From positions 62,001 to 126,000 of the IMG/VR virus record IMGVR_UViG_3300045125_000168: a stretch of 64,000 bases of DNA; one strand, given 5' to 3'. Shown here piece after piece: positions 981 through 64,000 of the stretch. The notes beneath the pieces are model-generated. The model had not been told where the DNA came from. It ran no database searches and saw only the letters and a program-made list of their open reading frames with translations. Both the position numbers and the translations under genes were made by a program. The stretch's first letter is position 1. Each line of letters starts with the position of its first letter.

Positions 981-1048
981 ATCGAATGATGAATCAACTA
1001 TATCTCCCACAAAGATTTTTTCAAAGAACTTCTTGGGAGATCTTGTCG

Positions 1049-1393
1049 ATGTCGTTTCTCAAACGCCTGATGATCCTTGCCGTGAAGAAAACCGAATACT
1101 TTGTCTGGGACGAGATGGAATCCGATGGGATCGCTATCGGACCCTCAGCCAAAGAAAATGTTATCCTGCAAGTGCTCGGCTTCTCCAAGCTCGGTCTGCG
1201 CATCGCAGGACAAGCGCCGTTTGAGAAGTTCAAGTTCAACTGGTGGAGTCCCAACTCAGGCTTGATTCATACCGAACTAGAGGTCGTTACCCAGTCCAAA
1301 AACTATTTTGAAGCCAAGTTTGTGGGCTCAAACCCAGCGATCCAACGCGAGATCAAATTCTGGGAAAAACGCTATCCCAAAAAGGTTAGCTAG
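1049..1393 (+). CDS. hypothetical protein with MSFLKRLMILA leader
   Basis: RBS GGGAGA at 1035-1040 favours ATG 1049; AAGATT at 1012. Confidence 0.6.
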   Translation: MSFLKRLMILAVKKTEYFVWDEMESDGIAIGPSAKENVILQVLGFSKLGLRIAGQAPFEKFKFNWWSPNSGLIHTELEVVTQSKNYFEAKFVGSNPAIQREIKFWEKRYPKKVS

Positions 1394-1818
1394 GTGAGAA
1401 CGTGTGCCCTGGTGTGGGTTCGAGGATATCGCGAATAAATTTTTCGACCATCTTTTCCAGGTTACCTTCGTCAATCATCACAGGCGAAAACCCTTCGTTG
1501 ACGATTTGTGCCGCCAATTCGATGCGGTCCCCTTTCTCACCTAACGGCTCAGTCCACAGGGCTTTGTACAAAACTTTGCTGCGAATAAGTGCCCGTTTTG
1601 CCTTTCGAGCGGTGCAATCGACGCAGTTGGCCGTTCCAAGCGCGAAGCTCTTTCAGCGAATGAAGGTAGGCGTTAGGAGTTTGGTAGTGAGTGATTTTAA
1701 ACAAATTTTTCGCGATTGGTAGCTGCAACTCGGAAAGTTTGTTGAGCGCCTTGCTACGGTGAAAAGCGTTGCTCCGCACTTCATTTATTTTTTCTTGGAT
1801 TTTTTGCAAAAAAACCAT
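1386..1818 (-). CDS. hypothetical protein (frameshifted, two ORF pieces)
   Basis: ORFs 1549..1818 and 1386..1571 overlap in different frames; MVFLQKIQ leader. Confidence 0.5.
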
Positions 1819-1946
1819 AATTAAGCGTCCACTTTTTTCAATGATTTAATAACTTCATCACGGCTCCGTCAACACTTCAACGCGAAAAATCTCACGTCGC
1901 CTAATCCTTGGGATTAAGTTTTTAATTTTTTTGATGAAGATCAGCA

Positions 1947-2434
1947 TCAATCTTCGTTGATTATCTCGTGGAAAATATCTAATTCTTTTTCCAAAGTAAG
2001 CTCTTTCAAATATTCTAGTCGCGTAAGCGCGACACCTGTCACACCAGCCGCTTGAGCAGGTTTGTATAAAGTTGTGGCATCCTTTCGCACTACCGAGATT
2101 GCGAGGTTTAGTTTGTTTTTACACTCGGCGACCGCCATATCAAGTTCTTCAATCATCTCGACTTTTTTTAAGGTTTTCTTTTGCTCCTGAATCAACGCAC
2201 GGTACTCGGCAAAAAACGCCTCTTCCTTTTTGCAAAATCGTCATCTAGCCCCATGATTCGTTTTACAAAGAGAGTATGATCGACAACTGCCGCGCTAACC
2301 TGCAAGCTATCAATTTGTTCAATTATTTTTTGATATTGATTGGCCAAGCTGCTTAACATTTTAATGCGCTTTGTTAAGAGCTTAGACACCTCATTGCGAA
2401 ATTCTGTGCGAGCCAAAGCAGTGATAAAACCCAC
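1947..2434 (-). CDS. two small coupled hypothetical proteins (2192-2434, 1947-2195)
   Basis: Overlapping stop/start, GGGAG RBS, downstream of a sigma-28-type promoter. Confidence 0.5.
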
Positions 2435-2498
2435 GAAAAAACTCCCTTAACCAAGCCCGACCAAAAATTTGCAATAACTGGACCAGCTACCTACCATA

Positions 2499-2525
2499 TT
2501 ATCGGTATTTCTTTGTGAAAACTAA
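2499..2525 (-). promoter_or_regulatory. sigma-28 (FliA)-type promoter
   Basis: TTAG-N15-ACCGATAA, intergenic, pointing at ORF 2434. Confidence 0.65.
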
Positions 2526-2845
2526 ATGGCTATCTTTTTTGAATTATTTCGGTGGCTTGTGGCCTATACCTTGGCAAAGGCGTGGGCAAACCTGCGGTAG
2601 CGGTCTTGGCTGAATCCGATAATCTCAGTCGAAAGCTCCCCTTGGTCCCAGAATTGAAGGACGGGAAAACGTAGCCATTCGCTCGCAACCCGCGCCTCTT
2701 TAAGCTCGGACCACGAGAAAAGGAAAAGGGGACGTTGGCTTTTTTTAGCTCGCTTTGAGCCAACAACGTCCACTGCTCATTCAACTCACCGACCAGCACA
2801 ACAAGGTGCTGATCGGTGTCGATGAGATCAAAGTAGGCTTGATCT

Positions 2846-4034: not shown

Positions 4035-5411
4035 TCAAGCAATCTAACACAATCAGGTGCTTTCATGTTTGAAAAGTTCTGAAGTTCTATTTGATCTGGC
4101 AAAATATCTTGCGCTAAGTCCACTAAGTTATTGAGGAGCGCAAACAGCTTTCTCTTGAGAGGCATTCTTTCGAGTGTCAAACGCAGAACTTCTTTTTCTT
4201 CCTCTTGCACTCTGGTTTCTCTTGCGGAAGGGTCTTCCAAACGGTCTTTAGGCGTTGTCACTTGGCCCACGTCGTCGTTGGAATAAAGCCTTTTTTCCAG
4301 GGAATGGGGATTTTGCAAAGCGATCTGCGAATAGATCTCCAAAACCTCAGCCAAAGGAATGTCATAGGCTTCGGCTAACTCTTGAAGAGAGCGCACGTCA
4401 CGGCCTTGCTTTCTGTGAAAGTCTTTTTAAACGCTTCCAGTTCGCGGTACTTTTGCCAAGACTGATAAGGCAACGCCACGAGGTTGTAGTTCGAGAGTTG
4501 GTAATAGATCTCGTAACGAATCTCGCGCTCGGCAAAGGTCGGAAAACTCAGCTGACATGCTGGGGGCATACTTCGGCAATGGCTTTCATCAAGCCACATT
4601 ACAACCGTAGTTAAACGTGTCGAAAAATTGCCACGCTTGGTTGCTTGCCGCGATCTGCTTTGTGAGAGTGTAGACGAGGCGAAGATAGGGGCGATGATAT
4701 CCAGTGTTTGATCTGAACGGTCTGTTCATAGGTTTCGATCAGAAGGTGAACCATCATAAACCAGTGGGACCGAGGCCGTAAAGACCGAGTTCTTTCTCAG
4801 CCCACTCCTCAAAGACCACTTCAGCGTAAGGGTCGGTCATGAGCTTACCAACTCCCACTCTCGCCAAAGTTCTTGAGCTTCCCGAGCTTTTGCCTTGAAC
4901 CACCACTCCCAAACCGTGCGCGATGGATTGAGATCCCAAAGGGAACGCCAGATCTCGTGAGTTTTTGGGGCCTGATTTTTTGCCTGATACTCGGTCACGG
5001 CATACCAAAGGGCATGTGCCGCTCCCACCAAATTGGTGCTTTTGCTTTTTCCAACTTGATAGACGCTTTCTTCTTCGTTGACGTCTTCCATGATGTTAGC
5101 ATTTTCAGCTAAAATTTCTATTCTTAGAAGTGCCCGAAGCTACCGCTGAAAGCTGAAGCAACAAAAGATCCCAAAAGCGCGTCGAGGGCATCGGGCACAA
5201 AAGTAAGAAAAGAATCCATAGTGTAAGTGCTCTAGGTGTGAAAACAGTTCAAAGATGATTGCTGCGGAGCGGGCGGAGGCTTGAAAATCAGCGTTCTGAG
5301 TTCCTCATCACCCTCGATAAATTCATTGAAGTGCTTAGGTGGTAACGATTTCTTTTTACGGCCCATAAACCCACCTTCAAGATTATGTAAAACCAACTTG
5401 TGAGGGTCCGA

Positions 5412-5965
5412 ATGAATTTAACGATCGCTCAACTGAAAAGAATGACCCCAGCGAGTATTCGCAAGTATGCCAGTACCGGGGTGATGATTAACACAATTCA
5501 ACGTCGTGGAGTGTCCATGAAGGACGCTCCCGCAGTGCATTCTACAGGTGATCGGTGTCGTGCCTACTACTGTACTACAGCGATCTCGGAACAAATACAA
5601 CGAGAAAATCGGTCAAAAAGCGCAAAGGCGGGGAAGCCCTACGCCTAGTGTCATTAAAAACTTTGGAACTAAAAAGAGAACCAGAAAACTGGTTATTTAA
5701 AGATAATAGCCTTGTTTGGGTCCACTGTGATTGTCCTTATTTTTCTACACCTCGAAGTCGTCCTCGCCCGTCAAGGATGTAGTGAAGTTAAATTTAAGGG
5801 TGAGTCTGGAAAGAAAAACCCTGGGTGAAAAGACGTTCCAACGGAGCCCTACTGAAAGTCAGGAACCCGCAGGGAATCCCGTACTTGTGCAAGCATCTGT
5901 ATGCGACGGTTCAGCTTCTTCTGGCTCAGGATCGAGGAAAGAATCGTTATACTGGTCCGTTTTAG
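5412..5965 (+). CDS. SWIM zinc-finger protein (frameshifted)
   Basis: VHCDCPYF...NPQGIPYLCKHLYA, the CxC-n-CxH signature. Confidence 0.7.
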
Positions 5966-10157: not shown

Positions 10158-11007
10158 GAACGCCTGATCGGTTTTTCATGGGTCCATGATAAAACCGTTC
10201 TAAAATCTCTTGGATCACGGAAGGGGAAACTGCATAGGGTCATTCCCCAGAAGCGAAGTTGGTCGCGTTCTCAATCGCTGCGAGCAAATCCTTTTGCTGA
10301 GTTCAAAGGTGTTGCCAAGAACCTGCAACCGCACTCGATCTTGCCTCCAAAGCGTGGTGCTCTTTATCACGATGTCATAAAGAGCTTCATGGTGGTTGCC
10401 TTCCGCGTCACTCCAGTCTTCAAGAGGTCTTATTTTGGTCTCAACTTCGCGCATGATTTTGGCTTTCTAAATAGGAAATCCGAGGATAGACCGAATCAAG
10501 GACAACTTTTTTCTCGCACCGATTGCACACATGCTGATACTGCGGAGGGTAACTTGTCAACGCTACTCCTGTTGCAACAAGCTCACCAGGGCAAACGTCA
10601 CATTTCTTTCGCTCCAAAAAAGTATCGACTTCATTTTTTTCGAGAAAAAATAGAGTATCCAAAACGTCCTCGCACGGTCATATTTTGTCAATTTTTTCTT
10701 TCATTAAGACTGGATTGAAGACGATTGTCCAGCGCAAAGCGCATTTTTATCAATGCCCATCATACGATCGATGCGAGCCCATTTTTCTTCGGTAGTATGT
10801 CCATCCCAATTAGGCTCGATCTGCTTCAGATTACCGACATTGAAGTTATCAGGAATGTGAAATGTCATTTTACCGCCATCAAGCGACAAAACTCTTTTCC
10901 ACCCTTCCCAATTATTGTCGGTGTCATAGTACCAGCCATCAGCATAACGAAGGGCAAGCATATTGCGCTCATAATATGCCAAGTCCTTCGCTTCAGTTTC
11001 TGTCATC

Positions 11008-11276
11008 TCAGGCTTCCAAGTTCTCATCTCCACCTCTTAATAATCCAAGTTCTTTGGCTAAAGCCTTGCCATGCTCTATTCCAATACGAGATTTATGGAC
11101 TGCTACCCAAAAATCCTTTTCAGTGATCGTTGCATTTATTTCTTCCACTTCCCAGTCTTCCGCAAGAAAAGCCTCTTTAGAAAGTTTTCCCACACAAGAA
11201 AAATCGATCGGCTCGCGGCTGTTCCAACTTTTTCTGAAAAGTTTCTACCGCTTTTCACAGCTTCTAGGATGTTCAT
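11008..11276 (-). CDS. small DUF2829/Tad2-like protein (frameshifted)
   Basis: MNILEAVKSGRNF...AFLAEDWEVE; paralog of 14560-14742. Confidence 0.45.
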
Positions 11277-11343
11277 GTTTTCCCTCTTGAAAGCACTTTA
11301 TCAAAAAACCCAATATGGGTGTGATAATACCCTTTCTGGGTTG

Positions 11344-11682
11344 TTACTCGCCCACACTGAAAAAGGTCTTTCCACCGTCTGTGCTGAAAAGACTCGACTG
11401 ACGTTTGTTCTGCCAAAGGTCGCGTTGTTCCCAAGGAAGCCTTTCTTCGGGTATCTTTTCCCATTCGGCAGCATCGCTTGTGACGGGAGTGAGAACTTGA
11501 AATTTTGCGAGCTTTTGAAAGACACTCAGGACGAGATCCGAAGACGCTCCACTGTGCCCTTCTTTGGCATGGGTCTCAATCAAGCGAAGCACGGCTTCTC
11601 CGATAAGACCATCGTAACAATCCTTGTCAAATAGACCTGCGCGTTGCAATTCTTCTCTCGCGTGTTCGATTAGTTTGCTCAT
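11344..11682 (-). CDS. conserved phage hypothetical protein
   Basis: HAREEL..AG, EGHSGAS, LTP.T...EW, WQNKR.S.LFS.DGGKT pattern common in phages. Confidence 0.55.
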   Translation of the reverse strand: MSKLIEHAREELQRAGLFDKDCYDGLIGEAVLRLIETHAKEGHSGASSDLVLSVFQKLAKFQVLTPVTSDAAEWEKIPEERLPWEQRDLWQNKRQSSLFSTDGGKTFFSVGE

Positions 11683-12464
11683 GCAAGAATGTCCTCGATG
11701 TTTGCCTTGAAAATATCCTCGTATTCAGGAGGCACATATTCACCCTGAAATAACTGGTCCAGGAATTGGAGTACCACAGGATCATTGAAAACGAATTTCT
11801 CAGGTGTTTGCTCTTGAATCGTCGCTTCTGTTTTTTCCATTCTCAAGCTCCAAGCCAATAATGATCGTATTGCTCGACAACATCCGAAGCATACGTTGAA
11901 TCCGGGCAAAGAGACACAAGTGCAACACGGCACTGATGACCCTCTCGGAGTAGGCCCACGACTCTTGTCGCGATCTCTTGATCCGATAATGCCGTTTTAA
12001 GGTAGTCGCAAATCTCATCAATACTCATGATTTGATATCCAAAAAAACCAGGTCTTTGACGCTACAAAACATATTCCAGTTCTGATCTGGACAATCTCCA
12101 GACTTATAGGCAAGTGTGCCTAGAACTTCTTCTGTGTAGTACAAGGGATGCTTTTCTTGACCAAGCCAGGGTCCCGAACTGTATTCGTCGGAGTCCGCAG
12201 TCATATAGACTTTCACAACCTTGGTGGGCATCAGTTCGTGACTTGAAACTTGCCGCTTATTTTTTCGATCATAGAACAACACGCACATGGGATCTTCGTT
12301 TTTCGGTTTCTTTAAGATTTCGATTGCCTCAAGAAAAGAATCCCGCAAGGCATTGATACGCCTCACTTGGTAGTCGGACCTAAAATTTTCAAAATCACCA
12401 TCCTGGGGCTCGCAAAGTTTTTCCCAAGCCAAAAGTTTTTCAGGATCAACCATAATTGTCCTCT

Positions 12465-12493
12465 TTGAATTTCTCTGGAATGTGGCTTATGAT
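12465..12493 (+). promoter_or_regulatory. sigma-70-type promoter
   Basis: TTGAAT-N17-TATGAT in the divergent intergenic region before the 12.5-13.2 kb genes. Confidence 0.45.
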
Positions 12494-12917
12494 ACCATCA
12501 ATATTTTAAAAAAAGAGGGAAATATGCAGGTTTTTGTGGTAGAAATGCTGCGTTGGGGTGAAAGAGAACTACACTCGTATGTGGCCGGAATCTACTCTAC
12601 CCTCGAAGAAGCTGAGGCTGCGGCTCAAGAGGCCGAAGAAGACCGAGGCGGAAAATATGTGGCCGAAATTGCGGCTTTCACTGTTGACCAAGGCCGCAAA
12701 AGAGATCACAGTGCTCAAGCGTAGTGACAAAAAATGGTACGAAGAAATACCCGAAGATCGAAGGTTGAACGTGGGGGACCGCGTAAAAAATATCGCGGAT
12801 TTTGAAGGAACTGTCCTTGAAGTGTCTGAAGAACATCTTGGAATACAAAGTGTGTGCGTTCGGTTCGATGTGCAGGATCGATGGCAATTAACTGAAAATT
12901 TGGAAAAAGTTTAAGGG

Positions 12918-13211
12918 TTGATTCTAGTGGACATCTCGTTTCTAGTCGCTGGTTATCCTGTACCTGTAGTTGATGGCTGGGTGAGCATAAGATCTTTGTG
13001 CCGAGCTTTGAAGCTCGACACCTCTCGTCAGAGGGAAAAAGCTGCCAAGGTATTTCAAGTCAAAACCTTGAAGGTGCCTCGGTTAGAGGCATCCGGGCGA
13101 GTAGCTTTGTATAAGCAAACGTGTATCCGACTTGAGGATGCAAAACAGTTTGTCGAATCTCAAGGTCTATGGACCCGAGGACCGTACCAAAAAGATGACT
13201 CGGCTTTCTAG
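12918..13211 (+). CDS. P22 antirepressor N-terminal-like DNA-binding protein
   Basis: WVSIRSLCRALKLD..RQREK...QTCIRL pattern. Confidence 0.5.
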   Translation: MILVDISFLVAGYPVPVVDGWVSIRSLCRALKLDTSRQREKAAKVFQVKTLKVPRLEASGRVALYKQTCIRLEDAKQFVESQGLWTRGPYQKDDSAF

Positions 13212-13683
13212 TCTGACGCGAAGGTGACCGAAAGGCTTTTATAAGTCATCTGAAATGTCGTACCGCTCAAACACGGAGAGTACGAGGGGGCAGAAGACTC
13301 CCAAAGAAAAGGTGCGTCCTCTTCGGAATAAGCACCAAAAGTGGAAGTGCCATGATCCAGCAACGGTTGCTGATACGGCATCCACTGCGAGGGGTCATGG
13401 TTTATCACCGTAAAATTCCCGGTGTTCGCGACCACAAAACCACCGCACAGGAAAAAATACAGGGGATCATTTCACCTACTCGCAGGTGGAAAAATACAAC
13501 CTGTGATGAGTCCAGTGCAAAATATATCAGCAACATATTTAGAAGCACAAAAAAAGAAAGTAATTAAGATGGTATTCCAGACCCAAGAACAACTGTGGCA
13601 ATACAGACGAACCAACCTGGGACTTCAATCTCAACTTCCGCGAAAAAAGGCATCGATTTCGCAAGTGACTTGCATGACTTTCG

Positions 13684-14525
13684 TTTAAAAAACCTTCGAA
13701 GCTCCAGATAATTTCCAGGGCTATGCGTCATCATCGGTGTCACGTCAACAGGTAGAAAATCGACCAAGCGAAAGTGTAAACATAGCCTATCGAAAAACGT
13801 AGGATGACGTAAGTGATTTTGGACTAACTCATTGTCTGTATTTTTCAGAGCTTCATAAAGAGATCCAACCGCGTTTTCAGGATCAAACCGAGGAAGGACT
13901 TCGGCAATTATCAGTTCACGCAATGACGGAGGAAACAACGGACGAATGCAATCCGAAACATCTCCAAAGAGGACTTTATAGGGCTTAATCCAAGAGAAGT
14001 CGGAAAACCCAAGAGAACGCTCCAGATGAACCGTTTTTATGGTCTTTTTTTGCCCAAGACATGGACCTTATCCTTTATCAAAGCCCACAAGTCTACGTCA
14101 CGGGTGACCACCAGATGATCCCGCTCTTTAAAAGTTTTAGTCACCGCTGCAATATAGTCGTCTGCCTCGTATCCAGGACCACCAAGTAAGTAACAAGGGA
14201 GATGACTTATCAGTCCAAAAATATCTTCTCTCACTTCTTCTGCGGTCAGTCCACCAGGGAGTTTTCTTTGTCTTTTTCGTTTTTTGTAGCGAGGGTAAAG
14301 CTCACGTCTTGATTCTGAAGATCCAACAGCATCGTAAGTAAAGACTAGGGCGGTCTCGTGCGGTTTTCCGAATTTTTGCCACACGGAGACGAGCTTGGTG
14401 TAAAAGCTCCTAATATGACCCGTGGGTTTTCCCTCTTTGAAGTATAATGCACGACTCTTTTGAAGTAGCGGAGGCCCACATCAAGTTCATCGTGTCGATG
14501 ATGATCGTGGACTTTGCACTTTCAA
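13684..14525 (-). CDS. 5'-3' exonuclease / RNase H (T4 rnh, T5 D15-like; frameshifted)
   Basis: IIIDTMNL, RRELYPRYK, GYEADDYIA, TRDVDLWAL. Confidence 0.85.
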
Positions 14526-14559
14526 CCGAGCAAGCTGTTGGTCGGAAATCCTGCACAGT

Positions 14560-14742
14560 TCAATCCCGCTTAATTTCCCAATCATCAGCTAAAAGGTCTT
14601 CCAGCGATATCGTGCGAAACCAGTCGTCAACCTCACATTGCTCTACCCAGGAGTTTTCACTCGGCCACCACTTGTAGGCTGGGACATCAAGTTCTAGCCT
14701 CCGAAACGGACGACCACTTTTGATTGCTTCGATCAGGTTCAC
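14560..14742 (-). CDS. small DUF2829/Tad2-like protein
   Basis: MNLIEAIKSGRPFRR...W.PS...EDLLADDWEI. Confidence 0.5.
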   Translation of the reverse strand: MNLIEAIKSGRPFRRLELDVPAYKWWPSENSWVEQCEVDDWFRTISLEDLLADDWEIKRD

Positions 14743-14976
14743 GGCTCAACCTCTTCAGCGTCGTCGTCCATCCATCTCTGGATGAGGGCTGCGAGCTTGG
14801 CTCTTTGCTCGGCAGTGGCCATTGTGGTTCCTTGAGGAGCAGTCATCCAATCATCCGCGAGGATGTCTTCTTTGGTAAGTCGGAAGGTATGCTCATCCAC
14901 GGCATACCAAGGTGTCTTTTAAGCCGCCCAAAGGATATTTGATGCTCGATAGCTCGCTTAAGGGCTTCAATAAGAT

Positions 14977-15438
14977 TCATGATCCCGCCTTGAAAACAAT
15001 CAAAACTTCTTCTGTTCCAGCATCGAAGTAGATCTCGTCTACCGCGAGACCCATCGTGATACCACTCTTATAATTCTCGACCTGAGAACCATAAGACTCC
15101 ACTTTGACCTCTGGATCTTTTAGGACTAATTCCTTGGTGAAACTCTTAGTGTCGTCGCTAGTTTCTTGCTCATAGTACGAGAGATTCATCAGGGCCTTTT
15201 GTCCGTCTGGAACTGAAACAGATAAAGAGAAGCCACCATCTTTACCCGCAGGTTCAAAGTCTACATACCACTTCAGAGTACCTTCGAGATAACACTCATC
15301 GAGATCGGCACCGGAGGGAATGTTGTATGCTTTATGAAAACCACCCTCCAGGTTGAAAGACTTATCTTTCAGTTCTGTCACAAACTCCAACCGACAAGAA
15401 CCAGAGGCCGCGACCGCTTGTAGTTTTTTCAAAAACAT
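14977..15438 (-). CDS. hypothetical beta-rich protein with MFLKKLQAVAA leader
   Basis: Intact 153-aa ORF; AAGATT 37 nt upstream. Confidence 0.65.
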   Translation of the reverse strand: MFLKKLQAVAASGSCRLEFVTELKDKSFNLEGGFHKAYNIPSGADLDECYLEGTLKWYVDFEPAGKDGGFSLSVSVPDGQKALMNLSYYEQETSDDTKSFTKELVLKDPEVKVESYGSQVENYKSGITMGLAVDEIYFDAGTEEVLIVFKAGS

Positions 15439-15968
15439 TGAGGGGACCCTTTCATAGTGATTCCTTTCAAATCTTTTAGGGCCTTTGTTCCAAAAGATAA
15501 GAGTGCTTTTTCAGGAAAGCATCCCAAGTAGGCTCAGAAGTTCTTCCCCGTGCATCTTTTAAGAATTTTAAAGCTGTTGTCAGTTCGTCCTTGTAAAACT
15601 TGTTAGATTTCTCTAAAAACTCGAACTCCTCGTCTTTGGGTGTCTGATTCATCCTCAGTCCGTCCTCTTATTTCATGGTTTAAAAAATCCTTGAGCAACT
15701 ATTTAAGCCTAATTTTTTCTCAAATGACTACTCCTTTTTTCAAAAAGGGGAAGGGGAGATTCCCGAACGGACAAAATCCCCAAGAGCCGAAGGCGATGGG
15801 GTTTTGGCCTGTACATGAGGAAGGGTGAGCCCGCGAGCGAAGCGAAGGGTGAGCCCTTCCTGGTGGAGACTCGACCCTAAAAATTTCAGAAAAGAAAACC
15901 CCCACGAACAACCGTGTTGTTTCCCCATCAAATAATATATCCCAGAGGGAGGGTGGCGGGGGGCGCTC

Positions 15969-17373
15969 TTAGGCTGTTAATATCGATCGTACAACCGCAC
16001 TCTTTTTCCAGGCGCGTTGTACGAGGACATATCCACCTTCGGGGCTACCGAGGCCGTTTTCTAGGTCACGCTGCAAATTCTTGTCTTGCTTCGCAGCGCG
16101 TTTGATATGGTCCTGCACTTCCTTCTTGAAAAATCTTCTCTCTTCTTCTGAGAGGCCCTCGAAGATCTTTAGAACCTCTCTGCCCAAGTCCTCGTCTCTG
16201 AGACTCTGATTCGGCTTCTGCTGCGTGATGGTGCAGATAACTCCATATAGCTCCGCGTTGGGAGTTGGAGCAGAAATCGGTGAGCCTTTTCGTCCGAGGA
16301 TTTGCAAAGATTGCTTCGATCTTTTGAAGCACATTTCGTCCTGGTCGTAGTACATGGAAAATTTTGGACCCAGGACAGTCTCCGGCTCAGACATTTCCTT
16401 TTGACGATCAGTGAACATCAGATCAGGGTGTTCTATCGCCAACTTGACGAGTGGAACACACATGCCCTTGCGCTTATAGAAACGATGCTTGTAATTGCAA
16501 CGCTTGGCTTCCGCTGCTGCTCGTTTCATCTTCAAGCCATGGATTGAATACATGCGAGCTTTGGGTTTTCGGAGTTGTATTCTTAAGGCTACAGCTTCCG
16601 CGTCCCCAAAACAACTTTGCACGTCTGGATGATCTTTGCTGGTCAACTCGGGAAAACCAGAAAGAAGTCTTTTCTTCAGACCTTGATACATGATGCTGCT
16701 ATCGCCTACACGCACACCATTTTTGATGTAGTCGTTGTAGGACTGGGCGGCCTGAGAACGGAGTTCCTTCTTGTCGTCGGTGTCTGCATAAGAGTGTTTT
16801 TTCAAGATAGGGAGACAGTCTTCAGATTTGTGTAGTAGCAAACCTCCATGCGTGGTTGAGCTCTTGCACGAACAAACCCACATCTTTCTTTCTCGCAAAT
16901 TCGCCCAGCGACACGTCAGAGTAGAACCCTGCATGGTGATTGGCGGAAGAGGATGTTTGGTTCGTGGGGCAGTTAAAGTGACCGTTCGCTTGCGCGAGCC
17001 GTAGGATATTGGTTGGAAAATTGAGTGTCCCGTACTTCGCTTGACGGAACAGATCTTGGACTCCCACCTTATCAGGTGAGGCCATGACGTAAATCAGGTT
17101 TTTGTGAACAGCTAACCCAGCATGAACCACGGGGACGTCTTTTGGCCAGTGGTGGGCAAAAGGCCCCTCGGTGGTCACAGGGTTTTCTGGATTATAATTA
17201 AGAGCAAAGTTTTTAAAATGGTGAAAGCTGAAACCAAGGGCTGAAAATTCTTGATAGACAGACCAGACCTTGGCTTTGGCTTCCGCATCAGCCTTTTCAT
17301 TGAATACGGCGAGAGTATCGTCACCTGTGATAGTGGCCCAATCGCAAATCCCTAGCTCCCTGGTATCGCTCAA
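15969..17373 (-). CDS. large hypothetical protein (frameshifted), possible replication-associated protein
   Basis: Pieces 16822-17373 and 15969-16934; basic C-terminal half; followed by a structured non-coding region. Confidence 0.4.
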
Positions 17374-17423
17374 CGCCTCGGCTAAAGGCAGAGAGATGTA
17401 AACCCAGAAGGAAGGTCCAAGAG

Positions 17424-19360
17424 TCAGACCCAGGGAGTTCTACCTGGAGCGATCGTGTCATTCGCGTAGAAGCCTTGACGGACTCGTTCGACAAACGGCA
17501 GGAAAATGTTGCGCAGGCAGCGAGCCGTATCGTCACTGGTCTTCTTGCGAACGATGGCATCGCAGCGTCGTAACCACTCGTTCCATTCTTCTACGTTTTG
17601 GCAGAGGTCGATGCTATCAAAGGCTTTCACCACATCGACATTAAAAGACCCAGCGGTTTTTTTGTCCGAGGGTCTTTTGCAGGCTTTGCATGACGTTGAG
17701 GGGAGTGGTCCCTGGCAGATATCCGCTATAACAATCTCCAAGCTGACGATTGAGAGCGCGGAGTGCGGTTTGGGCCATGATATTCAGGCCCGTATCAGTG
17801 GCTTTTTGCTCCTGGTGTCCTTGGTTCCAAACCCTACGGTCGCTGTTCTCAAGGACAACTTCTTGCAACGGAGCCTTGAGACGGAGAGGAAAGTTTTTCC
17901 TTTTTTCAAGGCAACCTTCCAGTGTTTTTAGCACAGGTGCCCAGATCTTTTCTGGGAAGAGGTATTCCTTATCCCGACTCTCGGCCCAGGCTTTGATGGC
18001 CTCTTGCAAGAGGGGGTATCAGTTGAGGCGACCACTGGTAGTGTTGCTCATAGAGCTTGTCACTCAGCGCCATAAACGCAGAAGAGGGCTTGGCGTCCTG
18101 CGGCTTTTTTGGCAACGGTTTGGTGATGGGGTTCGAGGAAACAAGGCTATTCCAAGCGCGTCCTCTGTACTTACCCTTGAGGGTTGGAAAAGCCCACTCA
18201 GGTAAATTGCGAAGCTCCCCACCGAGGACAAAGGCTTGAGCCGGAAAGTTTGCGGGGTGAAACGAATTGCTTCCGACTGCAAACTGACCTTCTTGCTTAT
18301 AGAAGAGATAAATGCCGGGGTACTTGCCGTACTCACCGATAGCCTGAACTTGTTTCAGAAAGAACGGCCATTTTTCTCCCAAAGGAAAGCAACGCAGGTC
18401 ATCATCACGTTCGATCCAGTAATTTGCCCTGTGAACAGCATAACTGGTTTCAGATCCCTGTTGCCCGAAGAGGGTAAGCCACATGCCTACTGATGGTTGC
18501 AGTTGTGCAAGGCTTTTGTCTCGGGCGTACACGATCTGATAAAGGGGTTGGAACAGGATGTAATCCATGCCCGCAGTTTGAAGTCGGAAGGCATCGAGGA
18601 TGGCTCTGAGAAAGTCGCGTTCGGACTTTCACACAGGCTCTTGAATGCACCGATTCAAAACACGACCAGATGACACCTTGGACATCGCGCTCGATCTCGA
18701 AGTTCTTAAGGCTTGGAGGTACACTTCGCGGGCAAGGCGGCAGAGCTTATTGAGCACTTCACCTAATTGAATCGCTTCGGTGTTGCGCGAGTAAAACTTT
18801 GCGTCTTGAATCTGTGCCTCTGTCTCACTGGCTCGGCAAAGCGGAGATACGATTTCTTTGAGCGAGGTCGCCCCCGAGTAAGGAGCTTTTTCGTTTCTGA
18901 CGAGGCACTCACCGTGCAAATTCTTCAGATCAGAAACTTTCTTTTTGTCAACCAGTTTCTGACCGTAGAGGCCAAAATATTTCAACTGACTGCGAGGTAG
19001 AGCCCACTGTGCTTTTTTGAGCAATGGTCCTTTGAGGTCGTCAAAGGTGCTGCCAAATTTTAAAGAGGGGTCCAGGAGTATTTCGAGAAATAGCTCAACC
19101 TCGGCCCGCCAGACTTTTGTGAGTTGGGGGTAGTTGTAAAAGCAGCGACCGAGAAGGAGTAGGGTCAAGACTTCCAAAGGCACCATAACCTCGTTCTCAG
19201 CAAGAACGGGCGGTACTTCTAATAGAAGTTTCGGCTCACCAATGACGGTGGCTTGGACGATCATACTCATGTGTCTCGATCGGTAGGGTACTCTGATTGC
19301 TTCACGGACATTATAAGTCACAGGTCCGAGCCCTTGGCGAGAGAAAAGTGAAGGGGTCAC
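17424..19360 (-). CDS. two hypothetical proteins (18629-19360; 17424-18568 frameshifted)
   Basis: Long ORFs transcribed divergently from the DNA polymerase. Confidence 0.45.
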
Positions 19361-25538: not shown

Positions 25539-27429
25539 CGAGGATGACGCGGTGCAAAACGACGAAGTAAGAGACATGAGTTATTTGGAGCTAAGGGCTC
25601 TTTTGGAAATTGATTGGTGTGACATTGCACCCCATCAAGTGACACTGTGGCTTGGCTCAACTTTTGGGCGCACCTTGAAGATTATTTAGGACTCGAAATT
25701 TCTGACGAGACTTTAGAAATCTATAATTCGACTTTGCCTAAAGAGTACGCTTTTCGTTCTTTGAAAGACGCTCGTGAGTATGTCAAACGTCAACTCGCGA
25801 TTGTTGATCGGTGGGTTGAAGATTCAAAATATTCGGGTGAGTCATGAATTTCTTTTTAAAAATGTTCCTCGGCGTCCTTTTAGAAGCAGCCGTCACGGGC
25901 TTAGATAAAACTTTTGGTTAAGAGAGGTTTCTCTTGACCAAGCCTTCAAAATCACCAAAAAATGCTACTGCTTCCAGTGTCAGAAAAGGTATCAGTTAGT
26001 TCTTACACGTTCAGAGTTTTTCAGGTTGAAGAAAAAAGCGGAAGAGGCGTTGAAGCAGGATCTCGATGAGGCACGGCTTCGGTTTGAGCAGCAGAATGAG
26101 CGACCCATGAGTGCTTATGAGGAGAAGAAATTTATCCAAAGTTTCCTCGATCCTCTTTGGTTACCGTGTCCTGATTGTCTCACGTCTCACGCGGGTACTT
26201 AGTCGGTTACTCCAACCAAAATTTTTGAAAGGAGTTGCTATGAAAGACCTGAAAGGCCTGAAGGAAGACATCAAAGGGCTTGAAAGAGAAGATGCTGAGA
26301 ATGCCGCAAGCTCTTATCAAAGCCAAGGATGAAGTGAAGGCCGAGTGCAAGCCAATGGGTCATTCCATTGCCTATGTGCTTTGCTTTCACAATGGCCTAT
26401 CTTTGCATGTTGCCGATGATGCTTCTCGGTGCCATGTTCAAGGACTTGTCTATGAAGTTTAAGCCTGCGGAGAAAAAAGAAGAGCAGAAGCCTGAAGAGG
26501 TCTCTGCTGCCTAAGGTTTTCTTCGCCAGAGGACGATCTCTTTGGAGATCGTCCCTATTTTTACGAAGAGTTTGATAACCGCTAAGATGAAATAAATAAT
26601 TGGTATAAATATTCCAAAATACCAAATAAGATTGCTTGTATCAAGTTAAATAGTGTAATATTTCCATCCTGAGCTTCAAATAAGATCCAACATAGTACAC
26701 CGATGAGATACCACGCGACGACGTAGTACAGCATACTGGTGTATTCCTTATGGTAAGGGTTTCTCACTAAATCTTGGCGGGTTTGTCATGGATTTAAGCG
26801 GCATTTTTACCCTGAAACTGGCGTTGGCAGAAACCTCAAACGATTGAAGTTCGCAAAGTAGGGAACTCGTATCTGTTCTCCTTTGTAGACCAGCTTGAAA
26901 GAGTTGTTCACGTCGAGGGTCAAGACGTGGGCTATGAGGTTACGAGTTTCTCAAGTCGTGATTTTTTCCATCTGACCACATTTGTGGTTTTTGGGGATTG
27001 GGAGCAGGTCACCTACAAGGATTGGCGGGGCCGCATTCTACCCGTAGAAATTTTAGCTCGCGAATATGCCCATGTCTGAGCTAAGTGACACCCTGCGAGA
27101 ATTAGACGAGAGACTTGTTCTTTCGCGTTATGATGGGCATCAATGGCGCACGGTGTCGATGGCGGAGTATGCTCTCGTGCGAGAGTACATTAGAAAGTTA
27201 GAAAATCAGATCGATGTGGAAGTTATGGAGCAGTTGAACTTGAGAGAAAAAGAATACTCGCGAGATGCTCGATTGTTTCGAGCATATTTTTCGATGTTCG
27301 CAAAAGATTTTATCGAGCCTCGAAATTGATTTAGTGGACATTAAAAAGAAGATCGATGAAATCGAATTAAGTCGTTCCACATAAGACTCTTTCAAGGCTT
27401 ATTTTCTATGAGCTTTGTGGAGAAACTTT

Positions 27430-28106
27430 ATGGCCTTGCTAAGTATATGTCCTCCCGGTGTCGTACTCCCTTACGCGGGTTCAACAAGCCCAGATGGTTG
27501 GTTATTTTGCGATGGTCGAGAGATTAGTCGAACGACGTATTTGGCCTTATTCACTGCGATTGGCACGGCACATGGTACAGGTAACGGAACAAGCACATTT
27601 AATATTCCCGACTACCGAGGACGTTTTCTAAGGGGTCGAGATGCAGGTGCGGGCAGAGATATTGATCGGGCTTCGAGAACAGCTTCGGGGACAGGTGGTC
27701 TGACTGGAGATAATGTAGGGTCTTTTGCAAGTCAACGCGACTAAGACGAATGGTGTGACAGTTTCGGGCGGTACCGCTTCGCTCGGAGGCACGACCAACT
27801 TTGCAAACAATGCACATAGTCATACTGGTGGTGGTCTTTATGCCGCGATTGCTTGCATCAACGGGGATGTGACCTATAGACAGATCGATGTTACGCCCTG
27901 GCAGGAAAACTTTTGGACAGATATCAATGCACCTCGCTACGAGTGGAACTGCGAATATCAGTGTTGGTGCCGCTATTTATGGAAGCTCTGGTAGCCCTAG
28001 TGCTACGGCTTCGGTCACGTTAAATAACACTGCGGCCTCTTTAGGCGCTGGTGATAGTGAAACGCGACCTCTCAATATCAATGTAAACTACATTATTAAG
28101 ATTTGA
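27430..28106 (+). CDS. phage tail-collar domain protein 1 (frameshifted)
   Basis: PPGVVLPYAG...GWLFCDG..ISRTTY..LF..IGT.HG.G.G..TFNIPDYRGRFLRG; C-terminal ETRPLNINVNYIIK. Confidence 0.9.
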
Positions 28107-31173: not shown

Positions 31174-31286
31174 AAAAGAAGCCCTCCTTGATAGGACAGC
31201 CTAATCTGATCTAGGGAGAAGATGCGAATGCTCGCCTTTTGTTCCGCCAAGATTGTATTGTGACGTATCTTGCGAGGTCTTTTACA

Positions 31287-36643: not shown

Positions 36644-36729
36644 GAGTGGTGTCCTCCTATTCCTATGCTGAATCTTAGGGCAAAGATTATCTGGGGCTGG
36701 GGTTCATCTGAATTGATAGGGGCATTTGA

Positions 36730-51849: not shown

Positions 51850-51957
51850 GGCAGCATAGAAAAATTCCCCCTTAGATCAAAAAATCTTTCGCTTCTAGGC
51901 ACTTACAGCGTCTTTTGGAAAAATGTTCTGTTATTTTAGCAAATTAAAACTTTTTTC

Positions 51958-60184: not shown

Positions 60185-60222
60185 GATGAGACTCCTCTCA
60201 AGGTACGGATTGGAATAAATCT

Positions 60223-60765
60223 TTACTTGATCCCGTAACCAAGAAGAGTCGCAAGCTCATGGTGTCTGGTTTCGATGACGCTCCAGTTGATGTCTTTCCA
60301 AAATTGATCGAGGTAACTGTCGAAATCGTTTTGATAATCGATTTGGTAAGCGTGTTCCCAGCAGTCGATCACGAGAATCGGCACACATCCAAGTGGAACC
60401 TTATCGTCGTGGCTTTTGATGGGAAAGCCCACAAAGGTCTTGAGAGTATGAGACCGGCCCCAAATGGCCCAGCCGTTGGGCTTGGCGTCTCGGGCGAAGT
60501 CGCTCATCCATTTTTGAAATGTCGCGAGGTTTGATTCTCTTCTTTTGAGGATTTCTTCGAGGAGAGGGCTTCTCTCGTCTCCTGCATGATCCTCAAGTTG
60601 CTCAAACCAAAGCGAATGAAGATAGATGGCGTTGTGAAGAAAAGACCTTTCAAAAGGTTCTTCTTTTTCTTCCCGCTCGGTATCTTCGATGACTTCCAGT
60701 CGTTTTTTATAGTTCTCGACTAGTTCCGTGTGCAGGCTCGCCGTTTTCGGCTTGTGGAGCATCAT
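60223..60765 (-). CDS. Fe/Mn superoxide dismutase-like protein
   Basis: LH.EL..NY, NAIYLHSLWF, GWAI, PILVIDCWEHAY..DY...YL..FW..INW. Confidence 0.85.
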   Translation of the reverse strand: MMLHKPKTASLHTELVENYKKRLEVIEDTEREEKEEPFERSFLHNAIYLHSLWFEQLEDHAGDERSPLLEEILKRRESNLATFQKWMSDFARDAKPNGWAIWGRSHTLKTFVGFPIKSHDDKVPLGCVPILVIDCWEHAYQIDYQNDFDSYLDQFWKDINWSVIETRHHELATLLGYGIK

Positions 60766-60801
60766 GATTTTTCGCCCTCGAACGAAGTTTAGGACCAAAT
60801 C

Positions 60802-61498
60802 TTAGAGGCTCCACGCCTGGAAACCAAAGGTGTCGAAAACACCGCGCAGGGAATCGGCACTACCAAGGTCTGGAAAGCTGTTGAATACCATAAAGCTCGC
60901 GCCCCAGCCGTTGATCTGATTTGGGTTGTCGGCGCTATCGTCCCAGTTGACACCCTCTTCGGTGAAAAAACCTTGCAACCAAAGGTTGGGGAAGATGTTA
61001 GAGGAATACAAAATATTGACGTAGTTCGGTTGTCCACCTGCCGAAATGTTCGACTTGTTCAGAATGCTTATAAAGTCGTAAAAGTTGCCAAGACCTTCGG
61101 GAATATATTGTTCTGGTATTTGGGATAAATTATTTTGGTCGATGGTCTCATGCGCTCCGGGGCTGATAGCACCGGACTGAAAAGTAAAAGATATGATCGG
61201 ATGATCGATCAGGATGTTAGACTCCTGAATACCAAGACCTACGGTGGGCCATTCGTGGTGGATAGCACCGCCTGCGACCTTTTCAATCGTGGTACGAGTT
61301 CCCACCTTCCAGCCGCATTGTGAGGGGTTGATCCAAAAGCTAATGTATTGGTCTGGTAAGTCAGAGTCTCGTCCTATAAGGAAAGGAAGCCTGTTTCTTC
61401 CAGTCCTGTTGGGAGGTATTTTTTTGATATTTAGTTTTTTTTTGGTTTTCTACTGCTGCCTGCAAAGCACTGAAACGATCAGGGGTTAAGGAAGCCAT
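60802..61498 (-). CDS. possible tail tube/baseplate-hub-related structural protein (frameshifted)
   Basis: FWINPSQ...TTIEKVAGG..HHEW, beta-rich; weak similarity only. Confidence 0.35.
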
Positions 61499-61501
61499 AT
61501 T

Positions 61502-62158
61502 TTAAGAACCTTTTTTCATATCTAGATTGGACTGCTGATATATTTTTTTCGATGGAAATTCAAAAGCCGTCAGATACTCACAACCCTGTCTGCCGTAATA
61601 AGCACAACCTGTGTCGATCATCGCATAGTTTTCGGTGATAATCGGATCTTTTTCGGTGTTATGTCCGAAGACACAATAGCGATCAGGACCAGGGTTGACG
61701 CTATAGCGGTTCCATAGAATCGATAGGTCCAGACGGAAAGAGTTTAGCTGAAGACAGTTCTCGATGTCTTCATAGTAAGGTCCAGCATGGCTGACAAAGA
61801 GATAACGCCCTTGCTCATCCTTGAGATCAGGAAATTCAAGGTAGAGGGGCCATGACGCAACCCACTCTATTTGGTCGAGCGTGTAAAGTTCTGGACGCCC
61901 CTTGTTCATAAGCCATGTGCGAGGAGGGTAAAGACCAGAGGGGACTTCCATACGGAAGTGGTCGAGCATCATGTCTTCATGATTTCCGCGCACAACTCGC
62001 CATTGTGGGTGATCTCGAACGTAGTCTAAAACCTCGGAAGACCGAGGGCCTCGATCGATCAGATCACCCACAAAGATGATGTCATCCTGGTTAGGCAGCT
62101 TTTTTATTAAGGCTTGCAGGGTTTTTAAACAGCCGTGAACATCGCCTATAATAAACAA
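61502..62158 (-). CDS. Ser/Thr protein phosphatase (metallophosphoesterase)
   Basis: GDVHG, GDLIDRG, RGNHE, SHAG, FGH, IDTG. Confidence 0.93.
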   Translation of the reverse strand: MFIIGDVHGCLKTLQALIKKLPNQDDIIFVGDLIDRGPRSSEVLDYVRDHPQWRVVRGNHEDMMLDHFRMEVPSGLYPPRTWLMNKGRPELYTLDQIEWVASWPLYLEFPDLKDEQGRYLFVSHAGPYYEDIENCLQLNSFRLDLSILWNRYSVNPGPDRYCVFGHNTEKDPIITENYAMIDTGCAYYGRQGCEYLTAFEFPSKKIYQQSNLDMKKGS

Positions 62159-62180
62159 GTGCTTTCCCTTTCATCAGCCA

Positions 62181-62897
62181 TCAGCCCCAATCGGCCTCGT
62201 AGGATGTCGCGGACGGTTCGTTCCCCGTGGAGAACAAAGCGCCTTGCTTCATCGGACCTGAGGTGCGGTAGTTTCCGGTTTGTAGAGCCTCGGTGGCAAA
62301 CTCTTTCGCTTCTCTCAGGAAGGCTCCTGCAAGCAGGAATTGCAGATCTTCTTCCGTCAACTCGCCACGGTGGATTTCGAGTTCGGAGGCGAGGGAGTTA
62401 CCGTCCATCTCACCTGCTGCAACCCGTTGCTCCCAAGCCTGCATTTTCGGGTGCAAAGTGATTTGCGCGGCATCGACATTTGGGTTTTCAGTAGAACTGT
62501 TTGCTGCTTGCGTCAGACTGACCGATTCCATGAGATTGGATTTACGTTCGCTTGCGGTTCCAGCGGTAAATTCCGAAGCATTCAAGCGAGCGTACTCAGC
62601 CCGTCCTTTGGGACTGTTCAACATACTGAGGGCTTCTTTTTCGTCGATAATCCGCAGGATATTTTTTCGCAAGCTGTTGCGAATTTCCACGGAGGTTTCC
62701 AAAATCCCACGGGGTAGAATGTCTGTCAGACAGTAGGGAATCCAAGTCTTTTGGAGTTCCAGTTTCACTTGTCTACCAGAGGTTGGATCGCTAACGGTGC
62801 AGACAAAAAGGCCACGGGGTTCGGTATTGTTGATAACGTACACAGATTTGTCTTGACGAAGAGCGGTCTCAAACTTGGTGAGATTGTTGAAATCCAT
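62181..62897 (-). CDS. hypothetical protein
   Basis: Intact 238-aa ORF with AAGGGA RBS. Confidence 0.65.
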   Translation of the reverse strand: MDFNNLTKFETALRQDKSVYVINNTEPRGLFVCTVSDPTSGRQVKLELQKTWIPYCLTDILPRGILETSVEIRNSLRKNILRIIDEKEALSMLNSPKGRAEYARLNASEFTAGTASERKSNLMESVSLTQAANSSTENPNVDAAQITLHPKMQAWEQRVAAGEMDGNSLASELEIHRGELTEEDLQFLLAGAFLREAKEFATEALQTGNYRTSGPMKQGALFSTGNEPSATSYEADWG

Positions 62898-63006
62898 GAG
62901 CGGTCCCTTTTAATGAAATGTTAAAACTATGATAAAGCCAAAAATCAATTTCGGCATTATTTAATGTGCGCATATTCAGCGCATTTGGTTAAGATCATCG
63001 CCATCT

Positions 63007-63306
63007 TCACGAGCTTGTCGCGAGAAATGCCTTTGATAAGGAGGGGGAGTTCATCTCAAGATGCTTGCCGTTACCTTCATTCAGTAGAGAGAAAATATCC
63101 CAAGCCTTAAGAGATTGCTCCTCAACGCACTTTAGGATTTCGTGTAAGACCTTGGCTTCGTCACGTATCTCTTCAGCAGTACGACCTGTTTGCAATTCAG
63201 TTTGCCAGTTTTCGTCAGAGGCGCTTCCAGGGGAAAGATCGATGCTATTAGGTCCGTCCTCAGCTTGAAGAAGATACTTATTCTTCACGTGGTCGTAAAA
63301 GCGCAT
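63007..63306 (-). CDS. hypothetical protein with MRFYDHVK...LLQA leader
   Basis: GAGG RBS; AAGATT 37 nt upstream. Confidence 0.55.
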   Translation of the reverse strand: MRFYDHVKNKYLLQAEDGPNSIDLSPGSASDENWQTELQTGRTAEEIRDEAKVLHEILKCVEEQSLKAWDIFSLLNEGNGKHLEMNSPSLSKAFLATSS

Positions 63307-64000
63307 AGTCGTTCCTCTTGTTGATTCCTAAAAATATAATCTTTGGTAAGACCTCAAAAAAGGGTAATCAATCGATCGTGCCCTTAGGGCTACTGATAGC
63401 ACAGTCGTAATTATCCGCGATAAATTGTGCTCCATAATGAATTGATTTTACAATTTCGTCTTCAAGAGCGACGATTTCGGGGTCTCCAGATCGATTTTTA
63501 TTGATCTGCGGATCAGAGAAATCCCATAAACCAATCAGCATTTTCTGGATTACAATTGAGAATGCATCGGTATTTTTACGCACATCGCAGATGGTCTTGC
63601 AGAAAGTTTTTTTCTGGGCGCCCTGATCATTTGTTAGTTGGACTGGATGGGCAGGGCTATCTCGCACCCCCATCCTCGTTCCTCTTACTGCTGATTGATA
63701 GTTTTGCTAAGTCTTTTGGTTTGGGTAGGTTGTTGACTAGGGGATATGGGATCGACCTCTCTGCTGGATCTTGATCCTGACTTGGCTCTTTTGTCCTCTG
63801 TCCCGCAACCATAGAGCAGTAGGAATGGAATCAGAGATTTTCGGAACTGGTCTTCCAAGCCTCGGGTATTAAACTAGCCTCTATCCGTTCTAACTGAGCG
63901 ATGTAAGACCAAGCCATGTTACCCCTAGTGCGGAAAGTATTTTGCGTCAAAGTGCAGTGATTTGTTGTGCGGTCCATTTTCGTACTGTAGTCGCACCTGA

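What the first reader, a model, noticed from the sequence alone, without database searches (positions are those of the whole stretch)
1012..63343. Second cis-element: AAGATT at a fixed ~37 nt upstream of dispersed genes (candidate late promoter)
Seen: distance from the first A of AAGATT to the start codon is 37 (1012 to 1049), 33 (5379 to 5412), 37 (15475 to 15438), 38 (31249 to 31287, tail collar), 33 (36676 to 36643), 39 (51888 to 51849), 39 (60223 to 60184), 38 (60803 to 60765) and 37 (63343 to 63306). A near match, ACGATT, lies 37 nt before 35799. None of these genes has the sigma-28 motif, and several are isolated genes inserted against local gene orientation. Inference: a short, single-box phage late promoter, analogous to T4 TATAAATA, read by a phage-encoded sigma or RNAP.
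Basis: partly seen in the sequence, partly recalled or inferred. Interest (0 to 1): 0.8.

Follow-up and report, generated by a model that had tools for sequence, protein, structure and literature searches.

The report
Conserved AAGATT promoter-like box in jumbo phage
A six-base word, AAGATT, sits about 37 bases before the start of roughly one gene in ten in this uncultured giant phage and its relatives. It is most likely the core of a phage-specific promoter, but nothing yet shows that it is a "late" one.

Summary
AAGATT is not enriched in the window overall (46 copies, about 59 expected). Yet of all 4096 hexamers it is the most position-specific one upstream of 172 independently called genes: 12 genes carry it at -30 to -42, against 0.88 expected (p=2e-10). 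The element is strand-specific, and one-mismatch variants are not enriched. It survives as a conserved island at three orthologous gene starts. Nine of 16 motif genes head divergent units, against 28 of 170 other genes.

Best reading: a single-box, -10-like promoter core with no -35 element. The lineage encodes its own sigma-70-family protein with regions 2 and 3 but no detectable region 4. That gene lies directly beside one conserved AAGATT site, so a phage sigma is a plausible reader. This link is inferred, not shown.

"Late" is unsupported. Downstream genes are mostly small proteins of unknown function, plus a SOD-domain protein, a PfkB kinase and tail-fibre-like genes. No capsid, portal or sheath gene was found in the roughly 120 kb examined. 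The ACGATT near-match has no support.

The parts
1012..1017 (+). AAGATT box, 37 nt before ATG 1049 (114-aa protein of unknown function). The upstream neighbour is a divergent tRNA-Ser.
5379..5384 (+). AAGATT box, 33 nt before ATG 5412. This gene is divergent from the phage sigma gene. The site is conserved at the orthologous position in L008, L009 and L025 as AAGATT, and in L026, L014 and L029 as (T/C)AGATT.
4061..5366 (-). Remnants of the phage sigma-70-family gene, split across several reading frames in this assembly. Orthologue of the intact 451-aa gene L008:14255-15610.
15470..15475 (-). AAGATT box, 37 nt before ATG 15438 (153 aa). It directly follows the TAA stop of the upstream gene and lies in a 5.8-kb segment that the relatives lack.
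26770..26775 (-). AAGATT box, 41 nt before ATG 26734 (50 aa), heading a divergent unit.
28098..28103 (+). AAGATT box, 33 nt before TTG 28131 or 42 nt before the called start 28140. The orthologous gene in L009 has the box at 39 nt.
31249..31254 (+). AAGATT box, 38 nt before ATG 31287, the start of a frameshifted tail-collar-domain gene.
36671..36676 (-). AAGATT box, 33 nt before ATG 36643 (81-aa ORF with an AGGAGG Shine-Dalgarno). The JGI caller called a gene on the opposite strand here.
51883..51888 (-). AAGATT box upstream of the PfkB-family kinase gene. It is 39 nt from TTG 51849, or 31 nt from an out-of-frame ATG that has a good Shine-Dalgarno.
60218..60223 (-). AAGATT box, 39 nt before ATG 60184. 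It overlaps the TAA stop of the upstream SOD-domain gene.
60798..60803 (-). AAGATT box, 38 nt before ATG 60765 (180 aa, Sod_Fe_C domain). It overlaps the TAA stop of the upstream gene.
63338..63343 (-). AAGATT box, 37 nt before ATG 63306 (99 aa).

Best explanation
AAGATT, in the extended form not-G, AAGATT, T-rich, T at +10 and a purine near +14, is the core -10-like element of a promoter class specific to this lineage of uncultured jumbo phages. It has A at hexamer position 2 and T at position 6, the two bases that sigma-70-family factors flip out of the -10 element. No -35 partner is present. Transcription would start about 7-8 nt after the box, giving a leader of about 24 nt that holds the Shine-Dalgarno sequence. 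This explains the near-constant 37-nt distance to the start codon. The most likely reader is host core RNA polymerase carrying the lineage's own sigma-70-family protein, which has regions 2 and 3 but no detectable region 4.

Shown: the positional, strand-specific and evolutionary constraint on the box, and the presence of the sigma gene.

Inferred: that the box is a promoter, where transcription starts, and which factor reads it. The temporal class (early, middle or late) is unknown.
For: Position and strand:
- AAGATT is the top position-specific hexamer upstream of 172 independent gene calls (p=1.9e-10).
- The result repeats in unseen sequence (p=1.4e-10).
- It is strand-specific.

Conservation:
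- The box is a conserved island in otherwise diverged orthologous upstream regions in phages of 38-48% GC.

Gene arrangement:
- Nine of 16 motif genes head divergent units where a promoter must exist (Fisher p=8e-4).
- In L008 and L009 the whole divergent intergenic spacer is 47 nt and contains two AAGATT copies.

Selection against stray copies:
- Antisense copies inside coding sequence are depleted (14 against 25.3 +/- 5.0), while sense copies are not (35 against 31).

Box anatomy:
- Flanking positions fit a -10, discriminator and start-site layout.
- Canonical sigma-70-type promoter matches are no more frequent than in shuffles.

The sigma:
- PHROG 351 at 2e-13, SigA in the PDB at 3e-9, and Foldseek to E. 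coli sigma-70 at 2e-7.
- None of about 60 family clusters has a Pfam region-4 hit, whereas every cellular RpoD in the same table does.
Against: - There is no transcript 5'-end data.
- The exact invariance of a hexamer, with no tolerated one-mismatch variants, is stricter than most -10 elements.
- The fixed distance to the start codon would also suit an RNA-level leader element.
- A second conserved promoter class, the sigma-28 type TAAAG-N14-GCCGATAA, exists in the same phages and could equally be what the phage sigma reads.
- The AlphaFold model still shows a small C-terminal helical bundle (residues 379-433), so loss of region 4 is not proven.
- Terminator-then-promoter arrangements were not clearly enriched.
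Confidence: 0.62

Rival explanations
1. AAGATT is a promoter -10 element, but a host sigma factor (housekeeping or alternative) reads it, not the phage sigma. The phage sigma would instead serve the sigma-28-like TAAAG-N14-GCCGATAA class or some other class.
For: The box keeps the A2 and T6 of a -10 hexamer. Two conserved promoter classes coexist but only one phage sigma was found. The genes served look like accessory genes with their own promoters rather than structural operons.
Against: The same hexamer is kept in relatives of 38%, 43%, 47% and 48% GC with very different palindrome-avoidance profiles, which suggests different hosts. The phage's own tRNA-Ser has an ordinary TTGAAA-16-TATAGT promoter, so the host's primary sigma probably prefers the canonical consensus. 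There is no TG extension to make up for the missing -35.
Confidence: 0.2
2. AAGAUU is an RNA-level leader element, not a promoter. It could be a processing site or a binding site for a translational regulator, such as the phage's conserved RRM-domain protein, placed about 20 nt upstream of the Shine-Dalgarno sequence.
For: The distance to the start codon is tight. In 7 of 16 cases the box lies in a 33-123 nt gap after a co-oriented gene and would be transcribed from upstream. The lineage keeps an RRM_1 gene.
Against: The box is over-represented at heads of divergent units, where spacers are tiny and a promoter is still needed. Antisense copies are depleted in coding sequence but sense copies are not; this is the opposite of what selection on an RNA signal predicts. 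The box is 20 nt from the ribosome-binding site, too far for a typical translational operator.
Confidence: 0.1
3. AAGATT is the half-site of a DNA-binding regulator (activator or repressor) that sits next to a weak, unrecognised promoter.
For: Tandem copies 9-13 nt apart occur upstream of the gene that is divergent from the sigma gene, and at L016 positions 18833 and 18842. The hexamer is invariant.
Against: Most sites are single, non-palindromic and strictly oriented. No other shared element that could be the actual promoter appears in the alignments.
Confidence: 0.06
4. The pattern is chance or a by-product of upstream base composition.
For: AAGATT is not enriched in the window as a whole.
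Against: An unbiased scan of all hexamers and positions ranks it first. It replicates in unseen sequence and in other genomes. It is conserved at orthologous positions.
Confidence: 0.02

Closest known systems
T4 late promoter TATAAATA, read by gp55 with gp33 and the gp45 clamp (from established knowledge; background in PMC5780444)
   Same: A single, nearly invariant -10-region box with no -35 element, dispersed through a large phage genome. It is read by a phage-encoded sigma-family protein lacking a normal region 4.
   Different: The sequence differs. The sigma here is about 450 aa with regions 2 and 3 and resembles SigA/RpoD, not gp55. No gp33 or clamp link has been shown. The genes served are not demonstrably late.
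AR9 non-virion RNA polymerase late promoter, A(-11)ACA-N6-U-R(+1) (PMC7598289)
   Same: A jumbo phage with a very short single-box promoter that starts AA.A and has a conserved T, then a purine, a few bases downstream.
   Different: AR9's box is read on the template strand of uracil-containing DNA by a non-sigma subunit of a phage multisubunit polymerase. Here position 3 is G and the spacing to the conserved T is one base shorter. No beta/beta'-like genes were seen in about 120 kb, and a sigma gene is present instead.
Bacterial sigma-70 -10 hexamer TATAAT, including -35-less promoters
   Same: A at position 2 and T at position 6, and placement consistent with a start site 7-8 nt downstream.
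   Different: Positions 1, 3 and 5 differ. There is no TG extension. The hexamer is invariant rather than degenerate.
SPO1 late promoters read by gp33/gp34, -10 box GATATT (recalled from memory, not checked here)
   Same: A large phage whose own sigma-like factors read a -10 box sharing 4 of 6 bases with AAGATT.
   Different: SPO1 late promoters also need a -35 box (CGTTAGA). None is present here.

Membership tests
sigma-70-family -10 promoter element | A at hexamer position 2 and T at position 6 on the non-template strand | tested here: met
   AAGATT is invariant at 16 of 16 aligned sites.
sigma-70-family -10 promoter element | Primary transcript 5' end 6-9 nt downstream of the hexamer | not testable with these tools
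The only indirect sign is purine enrichment at +14 (13 of 16).
sigma-70-family -10 promoter element | A sigma factor able to read it is available | tested here: inconclusive
   A lineage-specific sigma-70-family gene is present, but its promoter specificity is unknown.
T4-type late promoter system | TATAAATA box | tested here: not met
   The box is AAGATT.
T4-type late promoter system | Precedes virion structural (late) genes | tested here: inconclusive
   It precedes a tail-collar gene and the small gene heading a 940-aa fibre or decoration gene, but mostly proteins of unknown function, a SOD-domain protein and a PfkB kinase. Capsid, portal and sheath genes were not located.
phiKZ/AR9-type jumbo-phage polymerase promoters | Phage encodes split beta/beta'-like RNA polymerase subunits | tested here: inconclusive
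   No RNA polymerase Pfam or PHROG hit in about 120 kb of the contig or in the relatives' loci. About 230 kb of the contig was not examined.
phiKZ/AR9-type jumbo-phage polymerase promoters | Consensus AACA-N6-T-R (AR9) or TATG (phiKZ late) | tested here: not met
   The consensus here is AAGATT-t-n-n-T, so the sequence and spacing differ (PMC7598289).
sigma-28 (FliA/SigD) promoter | TAAA-N15-GCCGATAA | tested here: not met
   Such boxes exist elsewhere in the contig, for example before 35068 and 38479, but not at AAGATT genes.

The most novel reading that the evidence does not exclude
AAGATT and the roughly 450-aa sigma that has no detectable region 4 form a previously undescribed phage sigma-promoter pair. 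This would be a -35-independent transcription system, working like T4 gp55 with its late promoters but evolved separately. It would be shared by a whole family of uncultured 100-350 kb phages that has no relative in the GenBank phage collection and is represented in IMG/VR only by this contig.
Probability: 0.35. Interest if true: 0.7.

Novelty: new variant of a known kind. Interest (0 to 1): 0.5.

Why it matters
Promoters of uncultured jumbo phages are almost unknown. A review of jumbo-phage RNA polymerases notes that middle and late promoters of those phages cannot be predicted by bioinformatics (PMC7598289). Here a six-base box can be called from sequence alone, replicated in unseen sequence and traced across a phage family. 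The same family carries a matching candidate sigma factor. Together these give a directly testable sigma-promoter pair: core polymerase plus recombinant sigma on AAGATT templates. They also give a handle for defining transcription units in a lineage where most genes have no known function.

Tried and rejected
- Stop-codon reassignment as the cause of the short ORFs. No alternative code gives long ORFs. The cause is frameshifts: relatives have intact genes of 1040 aa (PolA), 1100 aa and 340 aa where the window has fragments.
- Nucleotide and protein searches against GenBank phages. There was no nucleotide match, and no match for the PolA fragment. The sigma gave only weak partial matches (25-29% identity over less than half its length) to unannotated faecal phage fragments. 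PhoH and the CobS-like ATPase gave only distant hits.
- IMG/VR scans with the sigma alignment returned only the window's own contig. The genome-contig scan returned only Mycoplasmatales RpoD genes.
- A -35 partner, a TG extension, or a downstream -10 with AAGATT acting as a -35 box. None was found.
None is enriched.
- A terminator immediately upstream of the boxes. Terminator-like hairpins appeared at a few individual sites by eye and in the scans, but there is no general pattern.
- Literature search for AAGATT as a phage promoter. The only phage hit was a PCR primer.
- Cluster look-up for names of the sigma family. None carries a name.
- Walking the contig to find capsid, portal or sheath genes. 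None was recognised in the extra sequence. One look-up failed.
Full report
**What the window is.** The window is bases 63,760-127,759 of JGI metagenome contig Ga0494335_066 (351,605 bp, sample 3300045125). Part of that contig is IMG/VR UViG_3300045125_000168, 236,430 bp. GC content is about 47%. The window carries phage genes: a family-A DNA polymerase with a UDG-like N-terminus and an intein, a DnaG-like primase, PhoH, a CobS/MoxR-like ATPase, tail-collar proteins and a tRNA-Ser.

ORFs are strikingly short. No alternative genetic code repairs this. Related contigs have intact genes of about 1040 aa (PolA), about 1100 aa and about 340 aa (primase) where the window has pieces in several frames. 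The tail-collar gene shifts frame next to a T5 run. The assembly is therefore riddled with indels, or the genes are decayed. Spacings measured here may be off by a base.

**The observation.** AAGATT is not enriched in the window as a whole: 46 copies against 59 +/- 7 in shuffles. The signal is purely positional.

I scanned every hexamer at -33 to -39 of Shine-Dalgarno-preceded starts. AAGATT came first with 8 genes; the next best had 4.

To avoid using my own gene calls, I took the JGI gene calls returned with the contig pieces: 172 genes over window coordinates -8951 to 82933.
- AAGATT at -30 to -42 is the most significant position-specific hexamer at any offset: 12 genes against 0.88 expected, p=1.9e-10. 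It scores above the Shine-Dalgarno hexamers.
- The distance histogram has a cluster at 30-42 with a mode of 37, over a flat background.
- The reverse complement has no peak.
- No one-mismatch variant is enriched.
- Two further window sites emerged, at 28098(+) and 26775(-).

**Independent replication.** The wrong-orientation control gives 2 (sites). This sequence comprised 37 kb of the same contig outside the window plus four related contigs: L008, L009, L025 and L026. A fifth relative, L029, has a site at 34 nt. The metagenome fragment L014 has one at 38 nt.

**Anatomy of the box.** Sixteen aligned sites give the following pattern:
- no G at -1;
- an invariant AAGATT;
- T at +7 in 10 of 16 sites;
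- T at +10 in 13 of 16 sites;
- a purine at +14 in 13 of 16 sites;
- a mildly C-rich stretch just upstream.

There is no -35-like partner, no TG extension and no second box downstream. Tandem copies 9-13 nt apart occur twice. In three co-oriented cases the box overlaps or abuts the TAA stop of the upstream gene.

**Evolutionary constraint.** The window from about 2.5 to 29 kb is syntenic with L008 and L009, whose primases are 62-64% identical to the window's.

Three AAGATT sites are orthologous:
- Window 5379 matches L008 14241/14254 and L009 14312/14325 (both tandem pairs) and L025 9970. The same position reads TAGATT in L026 and L029, and CAGATT in L014. Only the GC-rich L012 lacks it.
- Window 28098 matches L009 467.
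- L008 1019 matches L009 184.

Flanking bases differ freely, so the box is a conserved island. These genomes range from 38% to 48% GC.

**Why a promoter.**
- Nine of 16 motif genes have a divergent upstream neighbour, against 28 of 170 other genes (Fisher p=8e-4). Such genes must have their own promoter, and AAGATT is the only shared element. In L008 and L009 the whole spacer between the two divergent start codons is 47 nt and holds two boxes.
- Inside coding sequence, antisense copies are depleted (14 against 25.3 +/- 5.0 in codon shuffles), while sense copies are not (35 against 31). This fits selection against stray antisense promoters and does not fit an RNA signal.
- AAGATT has A at position 2 and T at position 6, the two bases sigma-70-family factors flip out of a -10 element (PMC7598289 summarises this mechanism). 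The purine at +14 fits a start site 7-8 nt downstream. That implies a leader of about 24 nt and explains the constant distance to the start codon.
- Canonical sigma-70 promoter matches are no more frequent than in shuffles.

**Who reads it.** The gene divergent from the 5379 gene is a sigma-70-family protein. It is intact in relatives (451 aa, L008:14255-15610) and fragmented in the window (5366-4061, minus strand).
- It matches PHROG 351 'RNA polymerase sigma factor' at 2e-13, Pfam Sigma70_r2 and weakly r3, and SigA/RpoD in the PDB at 3e-9. Its AlphaFold model (pLDDT 75.5) matches E. coli sigma-70 by Foldseek at 2e-7.
- It defines a family of about 60 clusters on contigs up to 275 kb. None has a Pfam region-4 hit, whereas every cellular RpoD in the same table does.
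- The model keeps only a small C-terminal helical bundle.

A sigma without a working region 4 would suit a -35-less box, as with T4 gp55. This is inference. The same phages also conserve a sigma-28-type promoter, TAAAG-N14-GCCGATAA, which could equally be the target of this sigma. That the box persists across relatives with different GC content and different palindrome avoidance favours a phage-borne reader over a host one.

**'Late'?** Not shown.
- Ten motif-driven products have no PHROG match.
- Others are a Sod_Fe_C protein, a PfkB kinase, a tail-collar protein, and an 89-aa gene heading a 940-aa head-decoration or fibre-like gene.

**Comparison and novelty.**
- The closest working analogue is the T4 late promoter with gp55: a single invariant -10-region box read by a phage sigma lacking region 4.
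- AR9's AACA-N6-U-R late promoter looks superficially similar, but it is read on the template strand by a non-sigma subunit of a phage polymerase (PMC7598289). No such polymerase was seen here.
- No paper in the library describes AAGATT as a phage promoter.
- The lineage has no relative in the GenBank phage collection. In IMG/VR the searches found only the window's own contig.

I rate it a new variant of a known kind. It is a solid and testable finding, but it is not a new principle.

**Limits.** About 230 kb of the contig was not examined.

Noticed in passing
window 19577-23255 (PolA), 15978-19264, 4061-5366, 31287-31884; also L005 2446-3823 (RecA) and L004 8712-9931 (S8 peptidase): Many genes are broken into pieces in different reading frames. 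Related contigs have single intact ORFs at these positions: PolA of about 1040 aa, a gene of about 1100 aa, and a sigma of about 450 aa. One shift sits next to a T5 run. This looks like an indel-rich (probably long-read) assembly rather than recoding.
   Followed up: partly
window -8951 to 82933 (whole examined contig); also L027, L028, L009, L025, L026: Extreme avoidance of 6-bp palindromes. There are 628 sites against 1447 expected. Sixteen of the 64 palindromes have zero sites, including GAATTC, GGATCC, CTCGAG, GTCGAC and CATATG, and 38 have three or fewer. The ratio is 0.39-0.43 in this contig, 0.49-0.71 in relatives L009, L025 and L026, and 0.87 in the close relative L008. This suggests hosts with many type II restriction systems.
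   Followed up: partly
window 35052, 38512(-), 41093, 53145(-); L005 about 6247 (window -2705); L029 upstream of genes ending at 3669, 5193 and 6054: A second conserved promoter class of the sigma-28 type, TAAAG-N14-GCCGATAA, lies 10-45 nt before small genes. It is kept in the distant relative L029. None of these genes carries AAGATT.
   Followed up: partly
window 893-981(-) and 997-1024(-): The phage tRNA-Ser(GCT) has a near-canonical TTGAAA-16-TATAGT promoter. Its -35 hexamer lies just beside the AAGATT box at 1012-1017 on the opposite strand, giving a back-to-back promoter arrangement. Further tRNAs are Ser(GGA) at L005 5947-6035, 13 nt upstream of an AAGATT box, and Tyr at L016 19101-19183.
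   Followed up: partly
window 10200-15970: A 5.8-kb segment lies between the primase and the roughly 1100-aa gene. It is absent from relatives L008 and L009, where those two genes are adjacent. It holds small genes, including the AAGATT-driven 14977-15438.
   Followed up: no
window 21957-22739; L016 11431-12534, 13300-15297, 5286-5771; L005 8533-9577: Several mobile elements are present: an intein inside PolA, HNH and GIY-YIG homing-endonuclease genes, and a split TnpB (IS605 OrfB / Cas12f-like) gene.
   Followed up: no
window 25148-25492; L009 1688-1972: An RRM_1 (RNA-recognition motif) protein gene is conserved between this phage and a relative at 79% identity. This is unusual for phages.
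   Followed up: no
whole contig: IMG/VR lists only 236,430 bp of the 351,605-bp JGI contig as viral. The sigma family is found on other contigs of 97-275 kb. In IMG/VR the sigma-family searches found only this contig, and it has no match in the GenBank phage collection.
   Followed up: partly
L008 6597-9890 (window 15978-19264, minus strand): A conserved gene of about 1100-1340 aa lies between PolA and the primase. It has no Pfam, PHROG or PDB sequence match, so its function is unknown.
   Followed up: partly
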